From: Octopus sinensis
Lineage: Eukaryota
Length of the DNA stretch: 64,000 bases
Assembly: GCF_006345805.1 (NCBI RefSeq)
Contig: NC_043002.1
Coordinates: 33,542,001-33,606,000 of the forward strand
Reading direction: 5' to 3'
The notes under the pieces were generated by a model. That model saw only the letters and a list, made by a program, of their open reading frames with translations. It was not told the origin of the DNA and ran no database searches. The translations under genes and the position numbers were made by a program. This document shows, piece after piece, positions 1,222 through 61,621 of this stretch (within the stretch, counting starts at the first letter, position 1; each line of letters begins with the position of its first letter).

Positions 1222-1240
1222 CATTATTATTATTATTATT

Positions 1241-1709
1241 AAAGGTGGTGAGCTAACAGAATAGTTAGCGCGCTGGACGAAATGCTTAGCGGTATTTCGC
1301 CCGTCATTACGTTCTGAGTTCAAATTCCGCCGAGGTCGATTTTGCCTTTCATCCTTTCGGGGTCGATAAATTAAGTACTAGATAATTACTGCGGTCAATG
1401 TAATCGACTGTTCCCCTGCTCCAAAATTTCAGGTCTTGTGCCTTTAGTAGAAAGGATTATTGTTATTATTATTAAAGGAGGCGAGCTGGCAGAATCGTTA
1501 AGTACGCCGGGCAAGTGCTTAGCCGTATTTCGTCCATCTTTACGGTCTGAGTTCAAATTCTGCTGAAGTCGACTTTGCATTTCATCCTTTCGGGATCGAT
1601 AAATTAAGTACCAGTGAAACACTGGGGTCAACGTGATCGACTAGTCCCTTCCCCTCAAAATTTCAAGCCTTGTGCCTGTAGTAGAAAGGATTACTTTTAT
1701 TATCATTAA

Positions 1710-1770
<61 letters not shown>

Positions 1771-1792
1771 TATTATTATTATTATTATATTA

Positions 1793-1834
<42 letters not shown>

Positions 1835-2299
1835 AGGTGGTGAGCTAACAGAATAGTTAGCGCGCTGGACGAAATGCTTAGCGGTATTTCGCCCGTCATT
1901 ACGTTCTGAGTTCAAATTCCGCCGAGGTCGATTTTGCCTTTCATCCTTTCGGGGTCGATAAATTAAGTACTAGATAATTACTGCGGTCAATGTAATCGAC
2001 TGTTCCCCTGCTCCAAAATTTCAGGTCTTGTGCCTTAGTAGAAAGGATTATGTTATTATTATTAAAGGAGGCGAGCTGGCAGAATCGTTAAGTACGCCGG
2101 GCAAGTGCTTAGCCGTATTTCGTCCATCTTTACGGTCTGAGTTCAAATTCTGCTGAAGTCGACTTTGCATTTCATCCTTTCGGGATCGATAAATTAAGTA
2201 CCAGTGAAACACTGGGGTCAACGTGATCGACTAGTCCCTTCCCCTCAAAATTTCAAGCCTTGTGCCTGTAGTAGAAAGGATTACTTTTATTATCATTAA

Positions 2300-2361
<62 letters not shown>

Positions 2362-2370
2362 TATTATTAT
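1241..2370 (+). repeat. Tandem duplication (period 592 bp) of a SINE-A dimer plus (ATT)n tract; four SINE copies
   Basis: Units begin aaaggtggtgagctaacaga at 1241 and 1833; SINEs at about 1242-1460, 1475-1692, 1834-2050, 2065-2282. Confidence 0.95.
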
Positions 2371-2666
2371 TGCTGCTGCTACTACTGTTTTTATTGTTGA
2401 TGTAAGATGTAGCTGTTGTTGCTGTTAACGCGTCCTGACTACCACCGTAATAACCCATTCTCTTTCTTTTTTCCTAACTATTATTATTACTACCACTGCT
2501 GCTGCTGCTGCTACTTCTACTACTACTACTACCACTACTACCACTACTATTAGTAGTAGAAGTAGTGTTGCATTGCTATTATTGCTGTTGTTGTTGCTGT
2601 TGTTGGTTAATAAGCTCCGACCACCATTAAGGCTGTTCTTTTCCTTTTCATAATTACCACTATTAT

Positions 2667-2959: not shown

Positions 2960-3087
2960 TTCCTCGGCCCCTTAAAAACTCAGCTCTATTAGTCTTCTAC
3001 TTCTTATACCAAGCAGAAAAAATGATATATATATGTGTATATCAATATATATATGTATATATATGTATATATATGTATAATATGTAT

Positions 3088-3122
<35 letters not shown>

Positions 3123-3150
3123 GCATGTATGTATATATATATGTATATGC

Positions 3151-3181
<31 letters not shown>

Positions 3182-3272
3182 CACATATATATATATATAT
3201 ATTTGTGTAGGTATATATATGTACACACATATATATATATGTGAGTATATAAGTATATGTATGCATACATAT

Positions 3273-3305
<33 letters not shown>

Positions 3306-3653
3306 TTACATATAAATATATATCTATGTATATATATATATACATACATATATACATATATATATATATACATACACACACATAAATATATATATATATA
3401 TATCAGTGAAGAAATAATAATTCTCTTTCAGTATAATTCATTTATTATTTACTTTTACATATATTTATTTATCTATTTATTTATTTATTTATTTTCATTA
3501 TTTCTCGTTGGTCCCGCAGCCTCCTGTAAATATATCCTATATTTTGACGGGGTAAATTTCAGAGATTGGGGAGAAGTTTCTCAAAAATAAACCTTCCCAA
3601 GGCAACACAGTAAATTATAATTTGTTATTATTATTATGATTATTATTATTATG

Positions 3654-3704
<51 letters not shown>

Positions 3705-3977
3705 ATTATGTGTGTCCCAGAGCTGCTTCGGTCGCATTTTGCAACATTTACATCTAATTTTTTAATCATTAATGTTTTAATTTTTATATCCTTGATTTTT
3801 TTCTTGATTTTATTTTTATTCTCATGGTTTATAATTTTATTTATTATGGACTTTTTTCTAGCTTTTTCAGATTTGTGCTCCAGTCTAAAAACTTGCATTT
3901 TTTTATGTGTGTTTATGCGCGTGCCCGTGTATATGTGCATGTAAGAATATGCATGTACATACGGATATGTATATATA

Positions 3978-4037
<60 letters not shown>

Positions 4038-4245
4038 GTGAGTGTGTGTATATATATATATATATGTATATATGTATATATATATGTATATATATATATA
4101 TATATATAGACATATATATATATATATACATTTCTATATATAAACATACATATGTATATATATATATATATATAATTATACATACATACATTTTATATAT
4201 ATATATGCATGCATGTATAATGCATATATACATATACGTACAACC

Positions 4246-4331
<86 letters not shown>

Positions 4332-4632
4332 ATATATAGCAACGTAACATATTTGTTCTTTCTTATAAAAAGCTTCAGTTGGTAACCTCCAAATGTGATT
4401 TTTTAGAGTAGCCCTCTCTTTTTCTTTTGCTTATTAATATTATTTTTCTTTATATTCTGAATATCTGAATAATTTCAATAATTTGCTGTTTATTTATTTC
4501 TTTTTATCATTTTAATTTATTGAGAAAGAAAATCTCAAGAGAAAGCCCCCTAACATCCAATCCTTATTCCTTTCTTGACAACTTATTTGCCTTTTTTAAG
4601 TTCTAACTCATTCTTGCCATTTTTTTAAAACG

Positions 4633-4669
<37 letters not shown>

Positions 4670-4692
4670 CTTATATACATATATATATATAC

Positions 4693-4723
<31 letters not shown>

Positions 4724-4732
4724 TATATATGC

Positions 4733-4774
<42 letters not shown>

Positions 4775-4841
4775 TATATATATACATATGTACATATACA
4801 TATATACATATATATATATATACATACATATATATATGTAT

Positions 4842-4891
<50 letters not shown>

Positions 4892-4900
4892 ATATACTAA
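2960..4900. repeat. Compound (TA)n/(ATT)n microsatellite fields
   Basis: Tracts at ~3020-3400, 3620-3700, 3960-4340 and 4630-4900. Confidence 0.95.
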
Positions 4901-11566: not shown

Positions 11567-12831
11567 CGAGGGACGTTCAATAAGTAATGCCCCTGATCCA
11601 TTTGCAGTTGTTTGATCTAGCTTGAATTTTTCATGTGCAATTATATATATAGATTAAATGGCAAATTACAGCTTTGAACTAATTGTAGTTTCTTATTTAG
11701 AGGTGTTTGAACTGAGTCAAGTGTGAAATGGAGGCTGTTGAGTGCCGAGCAGTGATCCGGTTTTTGTATTTGAAAGGACGCACACCACGGGAGACTTTTG
11801 ATGAAATGAAAGTAACTTATGGTGATGATGCCCCATCATATGACCTTGTAAAACGCTGGCATCGTGAATTCAAACATGGTCGGAACTCTGTGGAAACAGC
11901 TCCCAGATCTGGTCGCCCCCCTTCTGCCATTGATGAGGCATCTGTCCGTCAAGTTGAGGCTGCCATTTTGGAAGATCGACGCATAACTAGTCGCCAAATA
12001 GCCCATGAGGTCAAGATTAGTATCGGGTCTGTGGAAACTATCATTCATGTCCATTTGCATATGCAAAAGGTGTCTGCCAGATGGATTCCCAGATTGCTCA
12101 CACCTTTCCAGAAGCAAGAACGCGTCGAGTGCTCGAGGATGAATTTGGAGATGTGTCAAGAAGATGAGTCAAACTTTTTCAAAAGACTGACTACACAGGA
12201 TGAAACCTGGGTCCATCACTATGATCCAGAGACCAAAGCCCAGTCAATGCAGTGGAAGCACCGTGACTCACCTCATCCAAAGAAGGCAAGGGTGCAGTCC
12301 TCCGCTGGCAAGGTCATGCTCACAGTCTTCTGAACAGATTTCCTGGCAAAGGGTACCACAATTACAGGAGCCTATTATGCTTCACTTTTGAGGAAATTAA
12401 GAGAAGCTATCAAAATCAAGAGGCGGGGCAAGATCACAAGAGCATCCTCCTCCTGCAGGACAACGCTCTGGTCAACAACTCGCGTGTCGCCAGATCAGAA
12501 GCACAGGCGTGCGGCTATGAACTCCTACCCCATCCCCCCTACTCTCCTGACCATGCACCCTCTGATTTTCATTTCTTCCCAGCCATGAAGTTGTTTTTGA
12601 AAGGAAAGCGTTTCCCAGATGATGCAGCCTTGATTTCTGAAGTCACGTCGTGGTTGGAGGACCAAGCTGGGGTCTTCTACAAAAACGGTCTCCAGAGCTG
12701 CATCAAACGATGTGAGAAATGCGTAATTCTGGGTGGTTCCTATGTAGAAAAAGACTAATAACTGTGCCAAGTTTCGTTGCTCTACTGCTATGGGAGGTGG
12801 GTCAGGGGCATTACTTATTGAACGCCCCTCG
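11567..12831 (+). mobile_element. Mariner (DD34D) transposon, full-length ends, defective transposase
   Basis: TA TSDs; TIR CGAGGG(A/G)CGTTCAATAAGTAATGCCCCTGA; ORF 11728-12333 (HTH, TQDETW, AGKVM) then deletion and frameshifts. Confidence 0.97.
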
Positions 12832-13679: not shown

Positions 13680-15560
13680 ATCTCTTAATTTCATCTTGTA
13701 TTGCCAGATCTAAACCGTTGCCCGGGAGTTGTAGAAAGTAGCTGCTACTTTAAAAATAGAATCCGTATTATATGTGGTGTTCCTGAATGATTTGATATTT
13801 TAAAAGTTGTTTTTTTTTAGTGTGATCTTCCCTGGAATTTTGCTGGGGGATTTTTCCAGTCCCGTTTTGATAAACACAAGACACCCGATTACTCTGGCAT
13901 AGTTCAAGTCCTACGTTTTAGAGATATCAATATCAAATTCTTTATGTCGAAACAGTTTTTTCTTTAAGCTTAACTGAGATATGCTGGTATTGTCACATCA
14001 ACCAGCATGCAGGTTTTTATCACTTTTTAATTGTAATATCAGGTGTGTTTGCTTTAATTTCCCAATCTATCTGCATTGGCATGTCCCATAAGATGGTAAG
14101 GTTACCATTTATGGTAACTGTTTCTGGTTTATTTTCATACTCTTTCTCAGACATTTTGAAATCATATTCCCTACACATTTTCCAGTGTAGGCATACTGGT
14201 GTCTGCTGGCGGTTGATATAATGTGAACGGTGGTCTTTTCAAATGTTCTCAATATTTTTCTGTGCCATCGTTGAAGATGCAGTGATGTAAACCGACGCTT
14301 AGAGTTTGTTTTCGGGCAGCGATGATAAAGCTATCCGTTTCTATCTTGCATCCAATATCTTTGAATCATTTAGTTGTCTGTTGTTGGCCAACATCTACCT
14401 TTTTAAGCCTTTTTGGATATTTGCCACGCATAACTTTCTTTTTACTGTCTTTTGCTTATTCTTTGTAGCCCTGATGTACCGCTTTTGTTTTAATCTATAG
14501 GCAAAAAATTGTCGAGTTTTTATTTTGTCTTAATTCAGTGATATACAGTTTTTGTGAGAATTTTCTTCACATTTGATTGGATGTAGTTTCTTTTGCTTAC
14601 CTGATGTTTGATAATTTACAAAAAATAGTAACATGATACGTAGAAATACGTATCAGTGATTAGGTAGTTTCGTTCAAGATGTATCAAACGTTCACCTCTC
14701 TCTGCTTTTGATGGCTAAACACTATCAACATTTTGCTTTTGAATGGTACGTGTTGGCTATTATCAGCATTTTCCTTGTTTTAGTAACTAGTTTTTTTTTT
14801 AATCATTCAGTGTTCAATTTACTGTATTAAAACTGAGTGACCGTATGTATAGGAAAACTACTGATAGATTCATATCGGTCAGATGCTTTTAGTTCAGTCC
14901 TTAGTATCAATCTAACTCTCCTGTAATATTCTTTTTGTATTTTAATCTTTCATGACAGAAAGCTGTATGTCATCTCTTTCCTTTATTCCTAGGTATTACC
15001 TTCATGTGTCTTTCTTATGAAGTTCCTTGATTTTTGTGTTGCTGTTAAGGTGTAATTTTGATGTTACAGTAAGCGCATATTTATTGCATGTAGCTTTAGC
15101 ACATCTACGTAATCTGAACGCTATTGCATTACCATTACTGATCCTCTTCACAGTGATTAGTAGATCACCTGACGGATATCATTGCTGGCGAAGGTTTTCA
15201 GATAGCCCATATAAAACATATGACTAAAATATTGACGAGCTGTTTATAATTCTTCCTTGCTGTAGTCAACTACTCATGGGCTTGACAAAATATCTTTGTT
15301 GTTGTTGTCTAGCTCCAGTTAAGATCATGCCGTCCTTCCCTGAGATATTGCGAATAAAGGGTGACATTATCTAATTTGTTCTCCTTTTTCAATTAGGTAG
15401 GTTGTAATTTGAGAAAGATTAAGTTGCTCTTCACAAAGAGTAACCATGCCAAATCACCCGATATCATTGAAGATTTTCATTGATCTATTTTGCAATGATA
15501 TAACATCTATTACTCCTGTTCATCTTATATCTAGGTGAACTGGAGTAATCGATGTCATAT
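13680..15560 (-). mobile_element. Second, older R4/Dong-like LINE remnant (RT thumb to RLE)
   Basis: Degenerate K.ET..FIIAA..Q.L, HWDMP, ANTPDI and GT.HI.R motifs; 3' end abuts (TAA)n at 13619-13678; 5' boundary approximate. Confidence 0.7.
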
Positions 15561-16256
15561 TGAATCTGTTGAAATATGACTTCAAATTAATTTAATTTTC
15601 TGTAATTTTTTTTCTCAATTATTTTCTCCTAATTATCTTGCTCACTTATTTTTCAGCAATCAGAACCGCAAGTCTTGTCTTTCTTCATATATTTTAAACT
15701 GATCCTATCACATTTTTACATTTTATCAATCATCATTTTGAAACGTTATTGCAGGCGTCAAAGTTTATCAGAACGAGGTTGTAGCCTCGTTTTAAAGTTT
15801 ACTGCAGTTACCTATTGCATCCTTTCATTATAAGGTTTATTTTTATGCTTTAGTTATATTTTAGTTGCTCTTTTCTGGCAATAAATGAATACCTGAAGAT
15901 TCCTTCTCTACAACCTTGATATATCCAGTAGGACATCACAATCGCTTCATTATCATATAAAAAAACCGTGACTACCCTTGTCATCGCAACATTACAACTA
16001 TGACATACTTCTACTGTAACAGAATTTCATCACAACGTTTTACTATTTAACTCATGACTACAAAGCAATACATGCCTTGAATTTGTGATAATCATATCAT
16101 ATTCCAAACTGGACAACAATATATAATTTTCAGCTATTTAATACCAGCGTATACACAAACCCACTGCAAATATTTCAGGTCAGCAAACATTTATTTCCAC
16201 TACACAAAAGTATACTAAATATTTCATTGCGTTTGCTTTTAATATGTTGTCTTTAC

Positions 16257-19200
16257 TTAGCTTTTGTTTCGAAAACATCTCAAAATTACAGAACGGAAAG
16301 ATTTTGAAACAAAACTGTACAAAAAGGCATTTATAGAATGCTGTGTAAAACCAAGAGCCATAAATACACTATCTAAAAGATCGCTTAATCCATAGCGAAC
16401 CCACGTTAATACATGTTGTATCATTAGTGGTAATTCAAAGATAAATTTGCAAATTATTATGGTAAAAAGCATGACGTTAATCTGTCGAAATTGTTGACTT
16501 CTATCTTCACGTGTGAGTGTATTTCGAATCCTGCTCTGTTGCCTCAGATGGATGATAATTAATATATTCAGTATGACAGTGGCTGATGTTGGAATAAGCC
16601 ACCCGTTAAACATTGTTATTAGTATAACCAAAATATTATGAGTTTGTTTAGATTTAACGCATTGGTCATTATTATAGGACCTCATGCCGAGCTGAGAGAA
16701 ATTAAGCATTATCTCAACTAGAAAGCAAACAACCACTGTAGTCATAACTTTGGATTTTGTGATGTAGATTTTAGCTTTCAATGGAAACTTGACCGCAATA
16801 AACCGTTCTGCTGACATCATAGCAATTGCCCAAGCCGATGTAGATTTGACAAAAACTTTCAGATAATGAAATGTCTTGCACATGGTGAAATTTAGGTTCG
16901 ATATTTTCCCTCCAAAGAAATAAATATAAAAATCGCTGTCAAAAAATACAATTATACCTGTAAGCATTTCAATTGTAGAAAGGAACACTGGTATATAAAA
17001 AGCCACTTCGTTTTTAAACTCCGTCGATCTAAAGACAAGAACAGAGATGGTGTTGCCAATTATTCCAGTAAATAAAATAGCTGGTTGAATTATAATATCT
17101 ACCATGTTAAATGTTTTATTTAAATCAACAGCTTGTGTCAAATTTACCGTTGAGGAATTAACATTCTCCAACTGCTTTGGTAATTCGGTAATATTAGAAA
17201 ACCCCAAAATTGTTTCCTTTGAAGAACGCAATTGTGTTGTGGATTCTTTTGATGTAACCACAGCTGAGGAGTGAATCAAGGACGAAGTTATCAAATTTGG
17301 AGTGGTTGGGTCGTTGGACGCGTTAGAAAAAGACTGAATCGTCTTTTGTGATGTTAACTGCTGACTGCTTTTTAAATCCCTTTTTATTAATTTGTGAATA
17401 AGAGCAGAATTAGTTGACTTAACATTAAATAATAATTTCCTGCCGGTGAACGAAGAAAATATTTCCTCTAAAGACTTGATTCGACGCCGAGCGAAATGCT
17501 TAGCGGTATTTCGCCTGTCTTTACGTTCAGAGTTTAAATTCCGCCGAGGTCGACTTTGCCTTTCATCCTTTCGGGGTCGATAAGTTAAGTACCAATTGTA
17601 TACTGCGGTCGATATATTGGACTGGCCCACCTCCTCAAAAATTTCGAGCCTTGTGCCTAGAGTAGAAAACAATAATAAATTAATTGAAAATTTACATTGA
17701 CTGGTCTGGATTGGAGAATTGTTTCCAACTGATTTCTGAAAATCTGAGTTCGAATTTGTCCAGGAAATAAATGGAATGGTGTTATATTTGAAAATTAAAC
17801 GAGTTATTGGAAAAAGAACTAAGAATCTACCTGTGATTAAGATAGTTATGTATTTTGATTTTTTCTTGATTTGATGATATGCATATCTGAAAATTTTGCA
17901 ATTCCAAAATACTTTTGGTCTTCGATGAACAAGATTAGATCTACAGATGACCAGTATGAAAGATCTATACTTCGAACGAAATTCGAAACGAATTAAAATA
18001 TTTGAAACTAGGGAAGAATACTTTGGCAAAAAGATTACTTCGTAGTTGTGTTTCGGAATAAATGGTGTTTCTTTAAATTTCAAATTTTCCTTCCGAAATA
18101 AAAATGTCAATAATTTTGGTAAAGTTATTTTATATTGAAGAGAAGATATTGGTTGTTCCTTATTCGATGTCAGAACTGTTGCATGGTTACTAGTAAACAT
18201 TAATGAAGGATTCTTATTGATCTGAATAGAACTATGGTGAATAGGTTTGTGGATTGTGAGTAAGCGTGTTATAAATGAACAACTGGACGCTTGAGAGGTT
18301 TTTCCGGTAGAAAGCTTGTTAGTAGTTCCTGGTGAGTTTACAGGTGAACCAGGATTGACAATAAGTTTCACGTTATTACTCGAGGACGCTTCTGCTATAC
18401 CGAGCGTTGTATGTTCTGGTAAATGTTTGCTACCAGTATCATCTACAAATATACTTGTATCTGTAATTTTAACGTGTTCATGACTTTCAGGTGCCACACT
18501 GATCTTGGAATATTCGGGTGGTTTTATATTCTTGCTACCTTCTGTCACCAGAAAGTTTGTTACATTATTTGGTAATACTTCTTCCAAAACCGGTAACCCA
18601 GTATGGATTTCAGAGTCTGAGTTAATATTCTGTTTCTTCTTTAGCATCAAATCGCAGTCTAGCATATATTTCGCTACGTTTTCCAAAACTTTTAAATCTG
18701 AAAGATAAAGTTTCAGCGTTGATTTGGCAGTGACGAAATTCTGTACTTTAAATTTAAAATTTCGGAAGTTATTGTTGAGCATTGCAGTAAATATAGAACA
18801 AATTTGAAAAGTCCAATTATATTTATAATAAGCCTGAAATCTTTCCGCAAGATTTTGGCTGTTCTTTGTTAGAAAATATTTCATTTGTTTATTGACTGGC
18901 TTTACTTGCAAGTCCTCTTTGATACCATTATGAAACTTTAGCACTTTATTTTGCAGTTGTTTTTTACAAAAATATATCATTTCCTCAGTCGATCTTTGAT
19001 CTAAATTGTTTCTTTGACAATTCATATGTTTTCTGTAGAATTTAGAAAATATTTCGAAAATTAATTGTTTCTGTTTAACACTGTTTATATCCATATCTAC
19101 GTAGATATTTCTAAATATTGCCAAATCTGAAGATATTCTTTTCCGGTTGTTTACCAACCTGCTCGAATATTTCTCTCCGTCTGAAATAATAATATTCTTT

Positions 19201-19328
19201 TTTGCTGGAGTTTTTAATATATTCTTATTGGCAACAACCATATCCTTATTATTTGTTAAATTGGAAGTTTTCCAACAGTGCACACCCACTGTTAACTTGA
19301 TTAGAAGAAGTAGATCCAGGAACAACAT
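16257..19328 (-). CDS. Single-coding-exon class A (rhodopsin-like) GPCR, FMRFamide/peptide-receptor-like, with signal peptide and ~740-aa N-terminal region
   Basis: Uninterrupted 3072-nt ORF from ATG 19328. The ORF track starts at a GTG at 19331; an acceptor-like atttcag ends at 19331, 2 nt before the ATG. The N-terminus MLFLDLLLLIKLTVGVHC looks like a signal peptide. The 7TM part (17105-16257) has GN (TM1), C3.25, ERF (DRY equivalent), ECL2 Cys, P5.50, P6.50 and N..LY (TM7). A cluster of NxS/T sequons precedes TM1. The 7TM is near-certain; translation of the whole N-terminus is likely but unproven. Confidence 0.85.
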   Translation of the reverse strand: MLFLDLLLLIKLTVGVHCWKTSNLTNNKDMVVANKNILKTPAKKNIIISDGEKYSSRLVNNRKRISSDLAIFRNIYVDMDINSVKQKQLIFEIFSKFYRKHMNCQRNNLDQRSTEEMIYFCKKQLQNKVLKFHNGIKEDLQVKPVNKQMKYFLTKNSQNLAERFQAYYKYNWTFQICSIFTAMLNNNFRNFKFKVQNFVTAKSTLKLYLSDLKVLENVAKYMLDCDLMLKKKQNINSDSEIHTGLPVLEEVLPNNVTNFLVTEGSKNIKPPEYSKISVAPESHEHVKITDTSIFVDDTGSKHLPEHTTLGIAEASSSNNVKLIVNPGSPVNSPGTTNKLSTGKTSQASSCSFITRLLTIHKPIHHSSIQINKNPSLMFTSNHATVLTSNKEQPISSLQYKITLPKLLTFLFRKENLKFKETPFIPKHNYEVIFLPKYSSLVSNILIRFEFRSKYRSFILVICRSNLVHRRPKVFWNCKIFRYAYHQIKKKSKYITILITGRFLVLFPITRLIFKYNTIPFISWTNSNSDFQKSVGNNSPIQTSQCKFSINLLLFSTLGTRLEIFEEVGQSNISTAVYNWYLTYRPRKDERQSRPRRNLNSERKDRRNTAKHFARRRIKSLEEIFSSFTGRKLLFNVKSTNSALIHKLIKRDLKSSQQLTSQKTIQSFSNASNDPTTPNLITSSLIHSSAVVTSKESTTQLRSSKETILGFSNITELPKQLENVNSSTVNLTQAVDLNKTFNMVDIIIQPAILFTGIIGNTISVLVFRSTEFKNEVAFYIPVFLSTIEMLTGIIVFFDSDFYIYFFGGKISNLNFTMCKTFHYLKVFVKSTSAWAIAMMSAERFIAVKFPLKAKIYITKSKVMTTVVVCFLVEIMLNFSQLGMRSYNNDQCVKSKQTHNILVILITMFNGWLIPTSATVILNILIIIHLRQQSRIRNTLTREDRSQQFRQINVMLFTIIICKFIFELPLMIQHVLTWVRYGLSDLLDSVFMALGFTQHSINAFLYSFVSKSFRSVILRCFRNKS
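17484..17678 (+). mobile_element. 5'-truncated SINE (family A) lying antisense and in frame inside the GPCR ORF
   Basis: cgccgagcgaaatgcttagcggtatttcg...gaggtcgactttgcctttcatcctttcggggtcgataa...ccttgtgcctagagtagaaa matches the intergenic/intronic copies at 1242-2282, 46090-46495 and 60301-60531. Confidence 0.95.
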
Positions 19329-20799
19329 CACTGAAATATGTTTGAATTGAGATAATAAAATTAAAACAATGAAAACATTAAAATATTAGAATTACAAGGT
19401 ACATAAGATATTTGATGTAGTAAAAACCACATCAGGTCAGAGCATAAGAAGGAAAACGTGAAAGAAAAACTAATATTTAATTAGTTATATTAAGTACAAG
19501 ACAGTGTTTGAAATTACTAGGATATTGAATAGACTCACTTATAAGTTTACAATTACGTGAGGAATAAATCTAACCTAAACTTAGTCATTGAAAAAGAATA
19601 CCACGTGACAATTTCAGGGCCTAAGATGAAAGAGTGAAAGAAATTATCAAATTACAGTTAAGAGAACGTGTGTAAAATACAATATACACAAAAGACATTG
19701 TAAAAACAGCATAAATATTAAAGAATCTACATGTATAGCATATTTGGGACTATCTGTAAGATTTGGTCCAACCATACTTACTTATAGTTAATGATAAAGA
19801 TTGTTATTTAGAATATAATCAACCCTTATATAAGGTGTGAAAGTGTGTAGCCTATTGGCTAGAGAGCTAGACTTATCATCGTTAGGCCATACGTTAGATT
19901 CTTACGCGGAGTCTTCGAGCAAAGCACCCTCTTCACGTTGCTCCGGTACACTCAGTTGGAAATTAGAACTCATGATATCTGGGAGTTCACTGGACAACGG
20001 ATTAGCGTCCCGTTCTGTGAAATAATCTTGTTTATCTGAGCTTCAGTGTCTTGTAAATTCAGATAAGTTTGGTTTTATGAGCCTGTTGGTTGGAATTCAC
20101 ATTACATTTAAGATAAATGGAATGCCGAAGCCATCGTCCGTAGCTCCACGTGAAACCCGGGTTTGCTGTTGCAGCCGGTCTCCTTTGCGTCTGAGGTTGG
20201 CTGGCTCACCTCGATCACGGCATGGTTGCGGCGTGGATTGCGAAGCGGCGTCGGTGGACCGGTCGAGCCCGTAGGGTTTCTTAAAAGTACGGGCGGCAGA
20301 AAACCGCACGAGGTAGAGCGATAAGGGGTCCAAATTTTAAATTTTTAATTCACCTGAAGAAAACGGTTTTCTTTTTCAATGATGTTATCAAATTATTCAT
20401 TAATAAAAAAGCGTTTCTAAAACAATTGTCGTGAACCTTTTATCCCATCTTCGTTCTTATTTTATGCGAACACCATTTCTGGTTCCTTCCCTATGTTGTA
20501 TATGGAACTTACATTGGGACGTGAAACTACATGTCGGTATGCATGAGTATATATTTTCGTGCACATCAATATTTACATGTATGCGTATATTTGTATGTGT
20601 AAGTGTATGAATATGTCTATATATTATGGGTATATACAGGTGTGTTTGTATATGGTATACACCAAGATATGCAGATCTCGATCCTCACTAGATGTCCTCA
20701 GCATTAAGGTACTAGGGTTCAGAAGAATCTTAGAAATAATTATTTATATCCATATCTTTCTATCTATCTATTTATCTGCCTGTCTATATGCCTTTCTTT

Positions 20800-24334: not shown

Positions 24335-25304
24335 CGAGATTGTATCAAAAGGTTCCCGTACTAGTTATATTTAATAAGAAAATAACTTATTTAACAAAGT
24401 TTTAACATCATCTCCTTTGAAATAGTTATCTTGCGCAGCAATACACCTGTCCACGCGTTTCTGCCACTGTTGGAATCCGGCCTGGAAGTCGTTTTCCGGA
24501 AGCGATTCGAGGACCTTCTGCGATTCACTCTGAATCTCTACAACGGTGTTAAAACGGCGATTTTTAGCTACGTTTTCATCTTAGGGAAAAGATGGAAATC
24601 TGCAGGTGCTAAATCCGATGAACAGGGCAAGTGCGAAAGCGATACCATGTTATTTTCGGAGAGAAACTCACGAATGAGAAGAGCTCGGTGGCAGGGTGTC
24701 GTGAAGAATCCAATTCTTCGCACTCCATAGATTCAATCGCTTTCGTAGTATGTCCTTCCTCAAACGCTTCAAAACGTCGAAGTAGAACTCTCGATTGACG
24801 GTCTGGCCCTGCACAATGTCGCGGATGTCGAAAAACACGATGAGCATGCTCTCGATTGATCTGCGACTCTGTCGTGCTCTCTTCGATCGTGGAGATGAAA
24901 AACTCTTCCATTGTGATGACTGCTGCTTCGTTTCAGGGTCATAACTGTAGACCCAACTCTCGTCACCAGTGATAATCCTTTGAAAACATTGCTTACGAAC
25001 CATCGCCTCGTCGCCGTAAGCTTGCCGAAGTATGCTCAATGCCCCTGTGGCAGATTTACCAAGTTTAACGCAAAATTTCACGTTGGCTCTTTGTTTCAAC
25101 TTCTTGTCCATGACAAAAATCGCAGACTACAGCATACAGGTGATCACAAAAACGCAAATTTCACAACTTGCGAAGTAAACAGCGGTGTCACTTGGCACAC
25201 TGCCTCATAAAGGTCACTACTAGTTCTCACTACGCACGCAATCGTGTACTGCCATTTGTTGGCGCGCTACAGAACTAGGCCGGGAACTCTTTGAAACCAT
25301 CTCG
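24335..25304 (-). mobile_element. Mariner (different family), internally deleted
   Basis: TA TSDs; TIRs CGAGATTGTATCAAAAGGTTCCCG / CGAGATGGTTTCAAAGAGTTCCCG; ORF 24668-25111 (QRANVKFCVKLGKS..., ITGDESW, NWILHD). Confidence 0.92.
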
Positions 25305-36300: not shown

Positions 36301-36363
<63 letters not shown>

Positions 36364-36399
36364 CATTTGTATATATATGTATATATGTGTATATTTATA

Positions 36400-36449
<50 letters not shown>

Positions 36450-36488
36450 GTATATATATATGTATATATATGTATGCATGTATATATA

Positions 36489-36519
<31 letters not shown>

Positions 36520-36548
36520 AATGTATATATATATGTATATATGTATGC

Positions 36549-36584
<36 letters not shown>

Positions 36585-36612
36585 GTATATATATATGTAT
36601 ATATATGTATGC

Positions 36613-36680
<68 letters not shown>

Positions 36681-36690
36681 GTATATATAG
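36295..36690. repeat. (TA)n/(TG)n microsatellite
   Basis: Direct reading. Confidence 0.95.
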
Positions 36691-44502: not shown

Positions 44503-47500
44503 CGACAACGACGACGACGACGATGACGATATAATGATAATGATGATGATCTTACCGTAAACCCAGGCAACTGCAATGATTTCAAGAAACAATATCAACA
44601 TCAGAGTAAGACTAGCACAGTACCAGTCTATTATTTGTAAGACGTAGAGTCCACCCTAGAAATACACAGCAACACTTATTAGTGTCACTTCACAAGTAAT
44701 CCACATATTATAACAACACGTCAGATATCTTAATTTTGAAAAATGAAAGAAGTATTTAAAAAAAACGCATTATTTTTGGGGGATGGCCCAATATATAACC
44801 ACACGTTGACTAACATATCTTCTCTCGTTATATCAACAGTTTCACTTCCTTCAACATCAAAGAAGGCTGCTCACGCCTATAAACAGTAACAAAATTTCCT
44901 TCGAAGTACATTTATAATCTTTAAAATGGGGAGAACTTATTATGTAATGTAATCCTAGACACTTAAAGATAATACAAGACTCTTGCAGCTGGAATGAACT
45001 CATTGATCATCATTCGTATAGATTCATGTCGGGAGAATGTGAGCCGAAGGCTGCAGTTCTGTGACGGGCTAAGCATCGAATGCATTTTTTTCATAAGAGT
45101 TGTTTGAGTGGCAAGAATTGAGCGAACCAAATGAGCAGAATATATTTAATAGCTTTGAAGTTCAGGCGCTATTATAGTACAGCAGAAAGAGACACATGGA
45201 AGAAACAGAGAAGGGGTAGGAAAGAGAGAGGGAGTAGGAGAGAGAGATGGAGTAAGAGAGAGAGGTGTAGGAGAGAGAGAGTAAGCGAGAGAGGCGGTAG
45301 GAGACAGAGAGTAGGAGAGAGAGGGGTTGGAGAGAGAGGAGTATGAGAGGGAGAGAGAATGTAGGCATAGCGTTGTGCAGTGTGAGCGTAATAAAAAGTA
45401 AATTTAACCAATCAGCCACGTATTCTTTTATTTTTAGGGGTGGGTATCTATCAGGTATGTGAAAGGTTCCTGATTGGGGATTGTATTAAGGAAATTCGGC
45501 AACGGTTCAAAAGAAAAGATATTTTCTGGTCCTGAAGTTAAAACCTATTAATCCTTTATAACATTGTTTTCATTATGGTGTACAATGTTTAAGGAGTAAA
45601 CACATCGGACTCAGAACAGTTACGTATGTTATATTTTGTTTAAGGCAGTAAGCATTTCAGATGTAGAACTATGAGGTATGTTATATAATATTTAAGGCAG
45701 GAAAGGCGGCGAGCTGGCAGAAACGTTAGCACGCCGGGCGAAATGCGTAGCTGTATTTCGTCTGCCGCTTTAATCCATTCGGGGTCGATTAAATAAGTAC
45801 CATTTACGCACTGGGGTCGATATAATCGACTTAATTCGTTTGTCAGTCCTTGTTTGTCCTCTCTGTGTTTAGCCCCTTGTGGGTAGTAAAGAAATAGGTA
45901 TTTCCTCTGTCGCTACGTTCTGCCGAGGTCGACTTTGCCTTTCATCCTTCCGGGGTCGACAAATTAAGTGCCAGTTACGCACTGGGGTCGATCTAATCGG
46001 CTTAATCCCTTTGTCTGTCCTTGTTTGTCCCCTCTATGTTCAGTCCCTTGTGGACAATAAAGAAATAAGAAACGTTAGCACGCCGAGCGAAAGGCGGCGA
46101 GCTGGCAGAAACGTTAGCACGCCGGGTGAAATGCTTTACGGTATTTCGTCTGCGTTACGTTGTGAGTTCAAATTCCGCCGAGGTCGACTTTGCCTTTCAT
46201 CCTTTCGGGGTCGATAAATTAAGTACCAGTTACGCACTGGGGTCGATATAATCGACTTAATCCGTTTGTCTGTCCTTGTTTGTCCTCTCTGTGTTTAGCC
46301 CCTTGTGGGTAGTAAAGTAATAGATATTTCGTCTGTCTTTACGTTCTTTGTTCAAATTCCGCCGAGGTCGATTTTGCCTTTCATCCTTTCGCAGTTGATA
46401 AATTAAGTACCAGTTGCGAACTGGGATCGATGTAATTGACTGAACCCCTTCCACAAAATTTCGGGCCTTGTGCCTAGAGTAGAAAAGAATATTTAAGGCA
46501 AGAAGCACTTTAGTAATATGTTATATATTTAAAGCAATAAGCACTGGAGATTTAAAACTGTGTCGCACTATTCAATGTTTAAGGCAGTACATATTTCAGA
46601 TTTAGAACTGTGAGGTCTGTTATAAAATATTTAAGGCAGCAAACAACTTCCTTAAATATTAGATATGTCGCGTATATTATAATATTTAAGGCGATAAACA
46701 CTTCTTTGCCAGAACAATAAACAGACTTACAGAGGAGCGATTCGAATATTTTAATGTAATATTTAATGGGGTGAGTACTGCTATCTTTTGGAACGTATGA
46801 GAAACTTTGTTTTGGGGTATAACCCACTCTGGTCGAGTCAGATGTGACAGTAGTAAGACTCCATCATGGGTTATATTTGAAGGTGTGCAGTCGTCGAGGG
46901 ATCAAATATTTTCTGGTCCTTGAAAGAAGGCCAGTGTTTTTATGCAATTTTTGTTATGTCAGGGACGTGTGCTTGCCAAGAAAGACCCCTGTAACAAAGA
47001 GCCGTATCATTTCTTGTGACACGGAGGTTTTTATTTGTGTTATCGACGTGGCTCATTCGTTTGGTCCCGGTGAAATGACAGAATGGTTAAATTAATAAAC
47101 CTTACAACTTGAGTTGATTCCTTTCAGACACTAGAACAGTTTCCTTGTTTCCTATTAACACAGTTTATCAAATAAAAATTTTTTAAAAGTGGAAATTTTA
47201 CCGGTTAGTGTGTTATATCATAAGGCAAAGAAAGAAAATTACTCTCCCCAGACACAACAGAATATGCTTCAACGCACGAACTCATATAAAGAATCTTGCA
47301 AGCCAAATCCAAAAACGAAGCAGTTTATCAAGAATTCTGGGAAAATTATCTTTAATACTTCAGTGCTTGAACAAAAGAGTTAATTTCTTTCGCAGCTTTC
47401 TGAGAATGTACAGTGCGTTATAGTTCATATCAACCTCTAGATATTCACAGCTCTCTTTGAGAAGGTACTATTTGGAAGTTTGGGAAATAAATTTTGAGAC

Positions 47501-59500: not shown

Positions 59501-61621
59501 CAGACTTTTCTTCATCATTAAGGCCTTTTCCACATCCCATTGTTCTTAGAGAAGAGAGACGCAATCAGCGTGGCTCACCCAAAAACTGAAAAATCTGAAA
59601 TAAAAAAGGAAGGCCGTTACACGGAATAATGAAAACATAACAATGGCTTTACCATGGTTTGAAAATCAGCTAGGAAAAGTTTTATCAATATCGACTCGGA
59701 GAAAACCAAGAAATCCTAAGGCTCGCCGCCTTATATGTTAAACTTAATACACTACTAATGTTTGATGACCACCAGCTGGCATTTAGGTGACTAATTAACG
59801 CCACTCTGTGTAACACTTATTTTATCTATGTTGGGATCTGGAAATATATTCCTTTCTTTCCATCAGTTTTGGAGGCCTTTGAAAATTTCAGCTACATTTC
59901 TGCTTTTTACTAATTTCTTACAGAAAATGTAGTGTCTCTTCCCACATCACTAACCCACCAATACTAGTGACTATTCTTACTAACCATCACTATCCTAGTG
60001 ACTACCTTCATATATAAATTGCATTCAATATATCACAACTACATCGATTCTAGTGGCTATCCTTATTAGAAAGTTCTCTAACTTTAGAATCATAAGCATA
60101 CAGTACAACATTTTCTAAAATCTTCAGAATCGGCGACTTACCTTACCAGATGTCTTGATACCTTTTGAAAGACAGAGAAATGTTATCAACCAAATCAAGA
60201 AGAGACACAAGAGTAAAGGAGGTCGTACAGTTCCTATGTTGTTAACACTTGGTGACAGGTTCAATACATGACGCCTACATCGAGAATATAATAAAATATT
60301 TTATTCTTTATTGTCACAAGGGGCTAAACATAGAGGGAACAAACAAGGACAGACAAAGGAATTGAGTCGATTACATCGACCCCAGTGCGTAACTTGTACT
60401 TAATTTATCGAACCCGAAAGGATGAAAGGCAAAGTCGACCTCGGCGGAATTTCAACTCAGAACGTAACGGCAGACGAAATACGGCTACGCATTTCGCCCG
60501 GCGTGCTGAAGTTCTACCAGCTCGCCGCCTTTATGATATGATATGATATGATATGATATGATATGATATGATATGATATGAAAATGATATGATATATGAT
60601 ATGATATGATATGATATATGATATGATATGATATGATATGATATGATATGATATGATATGATATGATATGATATGATATGATATAATATAATATAATATA
60701 ATATAATATAATATAATAAATATAATATAATATAATAAATATAATGTAATGTAATGTAATGTAATGTAATGTAATGTAATGTAATGTAATGTAATATAAT
60801 ATAATATAATATAATATAATATTGTTAATGAATGATAGATTGTAAAGCTAATTTGAGTTGATGGAGTATTTACTTGGTTGCTAGATATACTGCAAACAGC
60901 AGTCAAACCTTACTCAAATCTCGCCCTACCAATTTTACGACGACACTGGATAATGAAATAGTTCTAGATAGACTATATCTTAAAATAAGATAGCATAGTC
61001 GAGAATGAAACACTTAGATTAAAGACTCATTCGCTCATAGGATTGTAGTGGATGAAATACATTTGATGAGAGATGATAAAGAACATCCGGTGACAACAAT
61101 AATTCGCACGCTCATCTCGACATTTCCGAGTTCCTGTTTTACCGCTCGCTTATCAGTTCCCTTAGTGGAGGACAAAACTCCTTGTGCTTGTAACTACATG
61201 GCCACACCAAATCATAATCATTTACTAGAAAATAATTTGGCAGAAAGCCACGGTTATAGACACGTTAATATTGATTTCACAAGGCCAGAAATGTCGGGAG
61301 GGAGTAAGTCGATTACATCGAGCCCAGTGCTCGACTGGTACTTATTTTATCGACCCCGAAAGAACTAAAGGCAAAGTCAACCTTGGTAGAATTTGAACTC
61401 AGAACGAGAAGGTGGATGAAATGCTCCTAAGCATTTTGCCCGTTGTACTAACGATTCTTTCAGCTCGTTGCCTTGTAGACATGCTAATATTAATAAAAAG
61501 GATATTTTACTTGTTAGCAATTCATGGAATAATAAATAGTAAAGAAAATTCCACGGGAACAGTATGAGAATATGAAAATAATGTTTTGCTCCATATGATA
61601 ATAGTAATAATAATAATAATA

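What the first reader, a model, noticed from the sequence alone, without database searches (positions are those of the whole stretch)
17484..17678. A SINE is read through in frame inside the GPCR coding sequence
Seen: about aa 551-617 of the ORF ([65 protein letters not shown]) is the antisense translation of the window's commonest SINE. About 550 open codons lie upstream and about 400 downstream. The same frame in neighbouring copies stops within ~20 codons (ORFs 1395..1631 and 2231..2458 end ...SRLH* and ...GRD*). The nearest GT/AG pair that would splice it out (17695/17468) creates T|AG, a stop. Inference: a tolerated or exapted exonic SINE insertion adding ~66 highly basic residues to a receptor ectodomain. 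Direct in-frame SINE insertion in a CDS is rare compared with exonisation by splicing.
Basis: partly seen in the sequence, partly recalled or inferred. Interest (0 to 1): 0.85.

Follow-up and report, generated by a model that had tools for sequence, protein, structure and literature searches.

The report
In-frame SINE fragment inside octopus receptor gene
A truncated SINE fragment sits in frame, without stop codons, in the long and weakly constrained N-terminal extension of an intronless orphan GPCR gene; a related species has the empty site, so this is a real but probably only tolerated example of a known, uncommon way for mobile DNA to become coding sequence.

Summary
Window 16257..19328 (-) is a 1023-codon ORF ending in a rhodopsin-type 7TM domain. 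Codons about 555-616 are the antisense reading of a SINE fragment (17484..17670) that has about 20 other copies in the window.

An ortholog from a related species (Logan contigs L001-L005, about 85% nt identity) is colinear and open over the whole ORF. It lacks the SINE: 181 nt of SINE replace 22 nt of target, and an adjacent 3-nt indel brings the net gain to +162 nt, or 54 codons. The copy is truncated at both ends and has no target-site duplication.

The N-terminal 745 codons evolve almost neutrally (dN/dS about 0.7, no codon-position bias). Yet they have no stops where about 12 are expected, and every indel is a multiple of three. So the region is translated but weakly constrained, which explains why the insertion is tolerated.

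Nothing supports exaptation. The same antisense SINE frame appears in Octopus bimaculoides gene models. Expression and splicing remain untested, and the SINE brings a strong acceptor-like site.

This is a well-documented new example of a known kind, of moderate interest.

The parts
16257..19328 (-). Single uninterrupted ORF of 1023 codons plus stop: an orphan class A GPCR with a 745-residue N-terminal extension. The ATG is at 19328.
   Evidence: The ortholog P0001/L001 is colinear with the same start and stop.
19272..19328 (-). Hydrophobic N-terminus MLFLDLLLLIKLTVGVHCW, which looks like a signal peptide (inferred).
   Evidence: Kyte-Doolittle peak of 1.79 at aa 2-20. It is nearly identical in the ortholog. 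No signal-peptide predictor was available.
17671..19271 (-). N-terminal extension upstream of the SINE (aa about 21-554). It has no known domain and is kept open but weakly constrained.
   Evidence: No Pfam, PDB or NCBIfam hit. dN/dS is 0.72. Differences by codon position are 79/100/103 across the wider span aa 1-745, which also includes the linker downstream of the SINE. For aa 1-555, 10.3 stops are expected and none are seen, and 0 of 5000 simulations were stop-free. All indels are multiples of three.
17484..17670 (+). SINE fragment matching consensus nt about 24-207 of about 215. Its sense strand is +, so the gene reads it antisense as aa about 555-616. Both ends are truncated and there is no target-site duplication.
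   Evidence: It is absent from L001-L005, where 22-23 nt occupy the site.
17657..17680 (-). Acceptor-like site carried by the antisense SINE end: TTTATTATTGTTTTCTACTCTAG|GCACAAGG.
   Evidence: It ranks 2nd of 158 AG sites in the CDS by a crude score. The O. bimaculoides model P0035 starts its SINE-derived stretch exactly at the equivalent ...AG|GCACAAGG position (inferred from the protein).
17097..17483 (-). Ser/Thr/Asn-rich linker with N-x-S/T sequons just before TM1 (aa 617-745).
   Evidence: Composition. The sequons NITE, NSST, NLTQ and NKTF are visible. dN/dS is 0.89.
16317..17042 (-). Rhodopsin-family 7TM domain (Pfam 7tm_1, aa 764-1005), with ERF in place of DRY and NAFLY in place of NPxxY.
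   Evidence: Pfam 59.7 bits against a cut-off of 30.5. PDB hits to 5-HT2B, alpha1A, H2 and others at 1e-13 to 1e-6. dN/dS is 0.47 and differences by codon position are 41/22/46.

Best explanation
The gene is an intronless, lineage-specific orphan class A GPCR. Its translation starts 745 codons upstream of TM1, at a signal-peptide-like start. That long N-terminal extension is only weakly constrained at the amino-acid level, but it must stay open because the 7TM domain lies downstream in the same frame.

After the window's lineage split from the L001 species, a fragment of an abundant SINE entered this region in antisense orientation. The fragment is truncated at both ends. The event was non-canonical, either LINE-mediated insertion with a small target-site deletion or capture during break repair. 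It replaced 22 nt of target with about 181 nt of SINE.

Three things kept the ORF intact. The fragment came from a SINE variant whose antisense frame has no stops. It entered in the right phase. The net length change is a multiple of three.

The receptor is therefore predicted to carry about 62 SINE-encoded, arginine-rich residues in its N-terminal extension. This is most likely a neutral or nearly neutral passenger, not an adaptation.

Shown: the anatomy, the site without the SINE in the relative, the 3n length, and the pattern of constraint. Inferred: the polarity and mechanism of the insertion, translation through the SINE, and an extracellular location.
For: - ORF and SINE identity.
- Site without the SINE: the ortholog is colinear over window 19693..14303, open for 950 codons, and has 22-23 unrelated nt at the site in all five samples.
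- The ortholog's 23-mer is no more SINE-like than random 23-mers (p = 0.42).
- The net change is +159 nt, plus an adjacent 3-nt indel.
- The N-terminal region is coding but weakly constrained. dN/dS is 0.72 against 0.47 in the 7TM domain. CDS identity is 86-88% against 83-86% in the flanks, and all 9 other CDS indels are multiples of three against 6 of 12 in the flanks. About 12 stops are expected under neutrality and none are seen, with 0 of 5000 simulations stop-free. There is no codon-position bias in the N-terminal region, but a clear one in the 7TM domain.
- The ortholog has no Met between about aa 455 and TM1, so its 7TM domain needs the upstream start.
- The 7TM domain shows no acceleration on the window's lineage: 9 window-specific against 9 sister-specific changes.
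- The open antisense frame is a property of a SINE subfamily (P0011 and P0053; copy 46278).
Against: - There are no transcript or peptide data for the window's species.
- Exact look-ups find no gene model with this product.
- The only public protein from a closer relative (P0005, a UniParc entry) is a fragment starting at aa 706. That position follows an AG, so at least one annotation treated the upstream part as non-exonic.
- With only two species, the polarity (insertion here or loss there) rests on parsimony and a non-significant similarity test.
- If the insertion is very recent, the lack of stops since then says little.
- In the ortholog species a frameshift allele that removes TM7 is present in 3 of 5 samples. 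Genes of this type can therefore be dispensable.
Confidence: 0.6

Rival explanations
1. The SINE changes splicing. The insertion created an intron inside the former single exon, or the SINE's strong antisense acceptor is used with an upstream donor. In either case the mature mRNA lacks the SINE or part of the N-terminal extension, and the read-through protein is absent or a minor isoform.
For: The acceptor-like site at 17657 ranks 2nd of 158 AG sites in the CDS, and in-frame, stop-free donors exist, for example at 17830 and 19285. There are 137 stop-free, frame-preserving GT..AG pairs spanning the SINE. The O. bimaculoides model P0035 appears to start a SINE-derived exon at the same acceptor. 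Alu insertions into exons are known to trigger intronization (PMC2394776).
Against: No pair that removes the SINE has good consensus at both ends, and the scoring is a crude matrix. If the SINE were spliced out, there would be no requirement for it to be stop-free and of 3n length, yet it is both. The ortholog region is plainly read through as one exon.
Confidence: 0.15
2. In the window's species the gene is an unexpressed or recently dead pseudogene whose ORF simply has not yet been broken. The SINE would then be one more neutral insertion.
For: The N-terminal region evolves near neutrality. A frameshift allele segregates in the ortholog species. No matching gene model is on record. A random antisense SINE insertion would stay in frame by chance in roughly one case in eighteen (my own estimate: 1/2 for antisense orientation, 1/3 for entry phase and 1/3 for exit phase, assuming the stop-free SINE subfamily seen).
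Against: About 6 stops would be expected on the window's branch alone since the split, and none are seen, nor is any frameshift (halved). The 7TM domain still shows a coding pattern of substitution, and its rate equals that of the sister lineage. The hallmark residues are intact: GN in TM1, ERF, the Cys pair C818/C891, P in TM5 and TM6, and NAFLY.
Confidence: 0.12
3. The polarity is reversed. The SINE was already present in the common ancestor, and the L001 species lost 159-162 nt of it by an in-frame deletion.
For: The copy is 85% identical to a crude local consensus, which could mean it is old. By eye, the ortholog's sequence at the site loosely resembles the SINE's 3' end.
Against: The resemblance is not significant (p = 0.42 and 0.91). 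The deletion would have to start exactly at the SINE's 5' junction. The copy shows no CpG-type decay, against 3-8 such changes in most other copies, which suggests its mismatches are subfamily differences rather than age.
Confidence: 0.08
4. The SINE segment has been exapted. It gives the receptor a functional basic module, for example a proprotein-convertase site or a ligand- or matrix-binding patch.
For: The segment is strongly basic, with 16 K/R in 62 residues, and contains RPRR and RRR motifs.
Against: Only one species is known to have it, so no test of conservation is possible. The surrounding region is nearly unconstrained. The same peptide occurs in unrelated, uncharacterised gene models.
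Confidence: 0.05

Closest known systems
Alu-derived coding sequence in primates (exonization, e.g. ADAR2 exon 8; Alu-derived exons in main isoforms)
   Same: A SINE read in antisense contributes in-frame, stop-free residues to a host protein. Such cases are a small minority of SINE-gene overlaps. Only 7-19% of exonized TEs in CDS are stop-free and frame-preserving (PMC2394776). Alu is in the main coding transcript of at least 11 genes (PMC6924539).
   Different: In those cases the SINE sits in an intron and is recruited through splice sites, usually as an alternative exon. Here the SINE lies inside a pre-existing continuous coding exon, and no splicing is needed to read it.
Alu insertion into an exon followed by intronization (CWF19L1, SS18L1)
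   Same: A SINE inserts directly into an existing exon, and the antisense SINE supplies splice signals (PMC2394776). The octopus SINE also carries a strong acceptor-like site.
   Different: Those insertions are in last exons or UTRs and are known to be spliced. Here splicing is untested, and the element stays open and in frame.
Octopus bimaculoides gene models that contain the same antisense-SINE peptide (XP_052828027.1, XP_052826731.1/XP_052826730.1, A0A0L8GQ56)
   Same: They use the same SINE family and the same antisense frame (...[38 protein letters not shown]), at 65-72% identity to window aa 547-627.
   Different: Those are uncharacterised predictions without a conserved host ORF or an ortholog lacking the SINE. 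The window case has a 950-codon orthologous ORF that brackets the insertion.
LINE-mediated insertions with 5' truncation and target-site deletion, or retroelement capture at double-strand breaks (my own knowledge of L1 biology)
   Same: The 5' end is truncated, there is no target-site duplication, about 22 nt of target are lost, and there is short AT-rich microhomology at the 3' junction.
   Different: The partner LINE and its cleavage preference are unknown for this octopus SINE. The mechanism cannot be settled from one locus.

Membership tests
Rhodopsin-like (class A) GPCR, Pfam PF00001 7tm_1 | Profile match above the curated threshold | tested here: met
   59.7 bits against a cut-off of 30.5, covering aa 764-1005 and profile positions 7-260 of 260. 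148 PDB GPCR sequences match at E <= 1e-3.
Rhodopsin-like (class A) GPCR, Pfam PF00001 7tm_1 | Seven hydrophobic helices with hallmark residues: N in TM1, E/DRY, a Cys-Cys bridge between TM3 and ECL2, P in TM5 and TM6, and NPxxY | tested here: inconclusive
   Kyte-Doolittle peaks are found for TM1, 2, 4, 5 and 6. The variants GN, ERF, C818/C891, LIP, ELP and NAFLY can be read. TM3 and TM7 fall below the crude threshold, and the AF2 model is unusable.
Rhodopsin-like (class A) GPCR, Pfam PF00001 7tm_1 | Assignment to a named receptor subfamily or ligand class | tested here: not met
   The nearest relatives outside the ortholog group are at most about 31% identical and are unnamed mollusc or annelid proteins. 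The PDB hits are spread over amine and peptide receptors. The receptor is an orphan.
SINE (short interspersed, LINE-dependent retroposon) | Short (about 100-500 nt), non-coding, many dispersed copies with a shared consensus | tested here: met
   The consensus BLAST gives 22 rows in total: this copy plus 21 other full or partial matches in 64 kb to a consensus of about 215 nt.
SINE (short interspersed, LINE-dependent retroposon) | Head derived from a small RNA, with pol III A and B boxes | tested here: inconclusive
   There is no ARAGORN or Rfam hit. A B-box-like GAGTTCAAATTCC and an A-box-like TGGCAGAATCG are seen by eye in the consensus. The copy in the gene lacks the first 23 nt, including the A-box-like motif.
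SINE (short interspersed, LINE-dependent retroposon) | Simple-repeat or A-rich 3' tail, and target-site duplications flanking each copy | tested here: not met
   Other copies end in (ATT)n. This copy stops at consensus nt 207, has no clear tail and no target-site duplication, and 22 nt of target are missing. It is a fragment of a SINE inserted non-canonically.
Direct in-frame TE insertion into a coding exon | A related genome has the site without the TE, inside a conserved continuous ORF | tested here: met
   L001-L005 are colinear, open for 950 codons, and lack the SINE.
Direct in-frame TE insertion into a coding exon | The net length change is a multiple of three and there is no stop in the host frame | tested here: met
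   The change is +159 nt, plus an adjacent 3 nt, and the roughly 62 SINE-derived codons are all open.
Direct in-frame TE insertion into a coding exon | The TE-containing mRNA and protein are actually made | not testable with these tools
   No transcript, read or proteome data for the window's species were available.
TE exonization by splicing (Alu-type) | The TE lies in an intron and is joined to flanking exons through splice sites it carries | tested here: not met
   The SINE is bracketed by 554 and 408 open codons of one continuous ORF that is orthologous end to end.

The most novel reading that the evidence does not exclude
The SINE fragment is not a passive passenger. By placing RPRR/RRR convertase-type motifs and a +9 net charge about 150 residues before TM1, it might turn the long N-terminal extension into a cleavable or differently trafficked pro-domain. 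Alternatively, through its strong antisense acceptor, it might create a new short-N-terminus isoform. Either way a single SINE insertion would have re-engineered a receptor in one octopus lineage. More generally, long 'spacer' ORFs that are kept open only because an essential domain lies downstream might be preferred places where mobile DNA becomes protein sequence.
Probability: 0.06. Interest if true: 0.6.

Novelty: new member of a known kind. Interest (0 to 1): 0.35.

Why it matters
Fixed, in-frame SINE insertions directly into coding exons are uncommon, and few have been documented outside mammals. This one comes with an orthologous site that lacks the SINE and with a clear reason why it is tolerated. 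The insertion landed in a 745-codon region that is selected only to stay open, not to keep its residues.

It is a clean example of how lineage-specific receptors in TE-rich cephalopod genomes can gain protein sequence from mobile DNA. SINEs make up about 11.6% of the O. vulgaris genome (PMC13282606).

It also carries a practical warning for annotation. Gene finders may wrongly cut such a SINE out as an intron, or truncate the model at the 7TM exon. The partial 319-aa public entry suggests this has already happened once.

It does not open a new question in its own right unless expression data show a functional consequence.

Tried and rejected
- Structure prediction. AlphaFold2 on the two-sequence alignment gave mean pLDDT 27.9 and did not recover even the 7TM bundle. 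No structural inference was drawn and no fold search was run.
- RNA-family searches. Rfam and ARAGORN on the SINE copy and on full-length copies gave no tRNA or other hit. A tRNA origin remains an impression from motifs only.
- Word-indexed protein searches. All three were used and returned only the P0001 cluster or nothing. The index does not return the O. bimaculoides RefSeq proteins that the exhaustive search found. Absence from the index is therefore not evidence that a gene is unannotated.
- Exact look-ups. The window ORF (GTG start, ATG start, M743 start) and P0005 are not on record. The window's species and any gene model remain unidentified.
- Literature search for the run accessions found nothing relevant. 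I could not tell whether L001-L005 are genomic or transcript assemblies, so they are not counted as evidence of expression.
- Ortholog filler as a SINE remnant. I tested whether the ortholog's 22-23 nt at the site derive from the SINE. The similarity was not significant, so I rejected this as positive evidence for loss.
- Target-site duplication. The search found only non-adjacent 6-mers.
- Other repeats inside the ORF or its flanks within the window: none were found.
- Domains in the N-terminal 744 aa. Pfam, NCBIfam and PDB sequence searches found nothing credible.
Full report

Yes. Window 16257..19331 on the minus strand is the only long ORF in the window. It has 1024 codons from a GTG, or 1023 from the ATG at 19328. 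Its C-terminal part (aa 764-1005) matches Pfam 7tm_1 at 59.7 bits against a cut-off of 30.5. It also matches many solved class A receptors weakly, with 5-HT2B, alpha1A, H2, neurotensin and opioid receptors at E = 1e-13 to 1e-6.

BLAST of 17400..17760 against the window gives 18 other matches, with E-values down to 2e-53. I aligned 13 copies and built a consensus of about 215 nt. The copy in the ORF matches consensus positions 24-207 at 86.5% identity, E = 4e-59. The element's sense strand is the window's + strand, so the gene reads it antisense.

The SINE-derived codons are about 555-616, that is 62 residues with 16 K/R and 7 D/E. There are 554 open codons upstream and 408 downstream. The window is 36% G+C. 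Over the first 745 codons the other five frames contain 26-58 stops each, while this frame has none. Chance does not explain the ORF.

**2. What the relative shows**

The first protein search returned one cluster, P0001 (950 aa). It comes from five Logan contigs of about 5.36 kb, L001-L005, assembled from runs SRR11869384, -385, -390, -391 and -394. They belong to one species and differ by a handful of SNPs.

L001 is colinear with window 19693..14303 at 79-86% identity, apart from a 620-nt window-specific segment noted under item 9. It has the same start codon and the same stop.

At the SINE, the gene-sense sequences compare as follows:
- Window: ...TTGTTT[181 nt of SINE]GTCGAAT...
- L001: ...TTGTTT[CTTGACTATGGATTAAAAATTT]GTCGAAT...

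So 181 nt replace 22 nt, a net gain of 159 nt or 53 codons. A neighbouring ATT indel brings the total to +162 nt, or 54 codons. All five contigs agree at this site.

The ortholog's 22-23 nt are no more similar to the SINE than random 23-mers from the same gene (p = 0.42 for the adjacent SINE end, 0.91 for the whole element). The simplest reading is that the ortholog preserves the pre-insertion sequence.

The copy lacks the first 23 nt of the consensus and the last roughly 8 nt plus the (ATT)n tail. No target-site duplication flanks it. This is therefore a non-canonical event. It could be LINE-mediated insertion with 5' truncation and a small target deletion, or capture of a SINE cDNA or DNA fragment during break repair. 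I cannot tell which.

**3. Is the 745-codon N-terminal part really coding?**

This matters because a typical class A receptor needs only about 40 residues before TM1, and the only other public relative is a fragment. That relative is P0005, UniParc UPI0006958183. It is 92% identical to the window and 79% to P0001, starts at aa 706, and has no Met.

The evidence points two ways, and together it is informative.

Evidence of weak constraint on the residues:
- dN/dS is 0.72 for aa 1-555 and 0.89 for aa 617-745, against 0.47 for the 7TM part.
- Differences by codon position are 79/100/103 (p = 0.16) in the N-terminal part, against 41/22/46 (p = 0.012) in the 7TM part.
- Nucleotide identity in the CDS (86-88%) barely exceeds that of the flanks (83-86%).

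Evidence that the frame is protected:
- Scattering the observed substitutions at random over the ortholog's first 745 codons gives a mean of 12 stops. None of 5000 trials was stop-free.
- All nine other CDS indels are multiples of three, against 6 of 12 in the flanks.
- The start codon and the hydrophobic MLFLDLLLL..VGVHCW start are conserved.
- The ortholog has no Met between about aa 455 and TM1, so its 7TM domain cannot be made without reading the upstream part.

My reading is that the extension is translated, and that selection acts mostly against truncation rather than on the residues themselves. No Pfam, NCBIfam or PDB match exists for it. In the exhaustive search none of the 150 best hits (the only ones listed, of 1503 with E-value up to 0.001) aligns to aa 1-545.

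**4. Why the SINE is tolerated, and how special that is**

In the consensus built from the window's copies, the antisense strand has stops in all three frames. Two long open stretches lie in different frames and are joined in this copy by one extra base in a C/T-rich linker whose length varies between copies.

But the open-through arrangement is not unique:
- One other window copy (46278..46527) is open in one frame.
- The exhaustive protein search found Octopus bimaculoides gene models with the same peptide. P0011 (XP_052828027.1) and P0053 (XP_052826731.1) read through in the same way as the window copy.

Given such a subfamily, a random insertion needs only antisense orientation, the right entry phase and the right exit phase. 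By my own rough estimate that is a chance of a few percent. With SINEs at about 11.6% of an octopus genome (PMC13282606), occasional survivors in weakly constrained coding regions are expected. I see no evidence of exaptation.

**5. Is the gene alive in the window's species?**

Indirect evidence says probably:
- There is no stop or frameshift in 1023 codons.
- The hallmark residues of the 7TM domain are present and shared with the relatives: GN in TM1, ERF, C818/C891, prolines in TM5 and TM6, and NAFLY.
- With P0001 as outgroup, the window and P0005 lineages each have 9 private amino-acid changes in the 7TM region. There is no acceleration on the window's branch.
- The SINE copy shows no CpG-type decay, unlike most other copies. 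This weakly suggests a young insertion.

Against this, no transcript data were available, and no gene model with this product is on record. In the ortholog species, 3 of 5 samples carry a T5-to-T4 frameshift that removes TM7. Receptors of this kind can therefore be dispensable.

**6. Splicing**

However, 137 other GT..AG pairs within about 400 nt would remove the SINE in frame without a stop, though none has a good consensus at both ends.

More interesting is what the antisense SINE end supplies: TTTATTATTGTTTTCTACTCTAG|GCACAAGG. By a crude score this is the second-best acceptor-like site among 158 AG sites in the CDS. In-frame donors exist upstream, for example at 17830 and 19285.

The O. bimaculoides model P0035 (A0A0L8GQ56) begins its SINE-derived stretch exactly at the equivalent position, which suggests the site can be used (this is an inference from the protein alone). 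Alu insertions into exons that create new introns are documented (PMC2394776). Only RNA data can settle this.

**7. Comparison with what is known**

TE-derived coding sequence is well known in mammals, mostly through exonization of intronic Alu elements. Only 7-19% of exonized TEs within CDS are stop-free and frame-preserving (PMC2394776). Alu is in the main coding isoform of at least 11 human genes (PMC6924539).

This case differs in mechanism, because the SINE went directly into a continuous coding exon. It also comes from a mollusc and has an ortholog without the SINE. I file it as a new member of a known kind, not a new kind.

The receptor is a class A GPCR by profile, but an orphan. Its nearest non-orthologous relatives are at most about 31% identical, unnamed mollusc or annelid proteins, some of which also have long low-complexity N-termini, for example P0025.

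**8. Verdict**

- 'Tolerated' is favoured over 'exapted'.
- Expression and splicing are untested.
- Interest is moderate (0.35).

**9. Things noticed in passing**

- The frameshift polymorphism in the ortholog species.
- Tandemly duplicated SINE pairs with a (TTA)46 array at 1223..2299.
- Mariner-type transposase remnants at 11728..12333 and 24668..25111.
- Long (AT)n arrays that create spurious ORFs.
- A 620-nt window-specific segment in the 3' flank.

No step had to be referred.

Noticed in passing
L001 about 3143-3147 (and the same place in L002-L005); equivalent to window aa about 989-990: A T5/T4 length difference in the ortholog's coding sequence. Three of five samples (L002, L003, L005) carry T4, which shifts the frame and ends the protein at 916 aa, before TM7. 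It looks like a segregating loss-of-function allele in that species.
   Followed up: partly
window 17657-17680 (-): The antisense end of the SINE provides a pyrimidine tract plus TAG|G. This is the second-best acceptor-like site in the whole CDS by a crude score. The O. bimaculoides model A0A0L8GQ56 seems to begin a SINE-derived exon at the same point.
   Followed up: partly
window 1223-2299: Two near-identical blocks of about 590 nt, each holding two SINE copies of different subtypes, separated by a (TTA)46 microsatellite at 1697-1833. This is a local tandem duplication of a SINE pair.
   Followed up: no
window 11728-12333 (+) and 24668-25111 (-): ORFs with Mos1/mariner HTH_48 and Transposase_1 matches. 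They are remnants of Tc1/mariner DNA transposons.
   Followed up: no
window 3025-3403, 3965-4338, 4636-4896, 36301-36689: (AT)n/(TA)n arrays of 260-390 nt. They account for several of the 125-200-aa ORFs listed on both strands, which are therefore spurious.
   Followed up: no
window 14822-15441 versus L001 4048-4066: A 620-nt segment in the gene's 3' flank is present in the window but represented by only 19 nt in the ortholog contig. It is not repeated elsewhere in the window. L001 4558-5362 has no match in the window at all.
   Followed up: no
window 17484-17670 versus other SINE copies: The copy inside the gene has 27 mismatches to the local consensus, none of CpG-to-TpG/CpA type. Eight of the other ten copies have 3-8 such changes; the two copies of the subfamily with the extra 18-20 nt (46095-46344 and 60278-60528) also have none.
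   Followed up: no
alignment A1 (window ORF versus P0001): All 12 amino-acid-level gaps are in the ortholog's row. Besides the SINE, the window's protein is longer at every one of the 11 other small indels.
   Followed up: no
window 45708-46493: A cluster of five partial SINE copies packed head to tail or nested within about 800 nt. It includes the one other copy whose antisense frame is fully open (46278-46527).
   Followed up: no
tool behaviour: The word-indexed protein search did not return O. bimaculoides RefSeq and UniProt proteins that share long exact stretches with the query and that the exhaustive search did find. Negative results from that index say little for cephalopod proteins.
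   Followed up: partly
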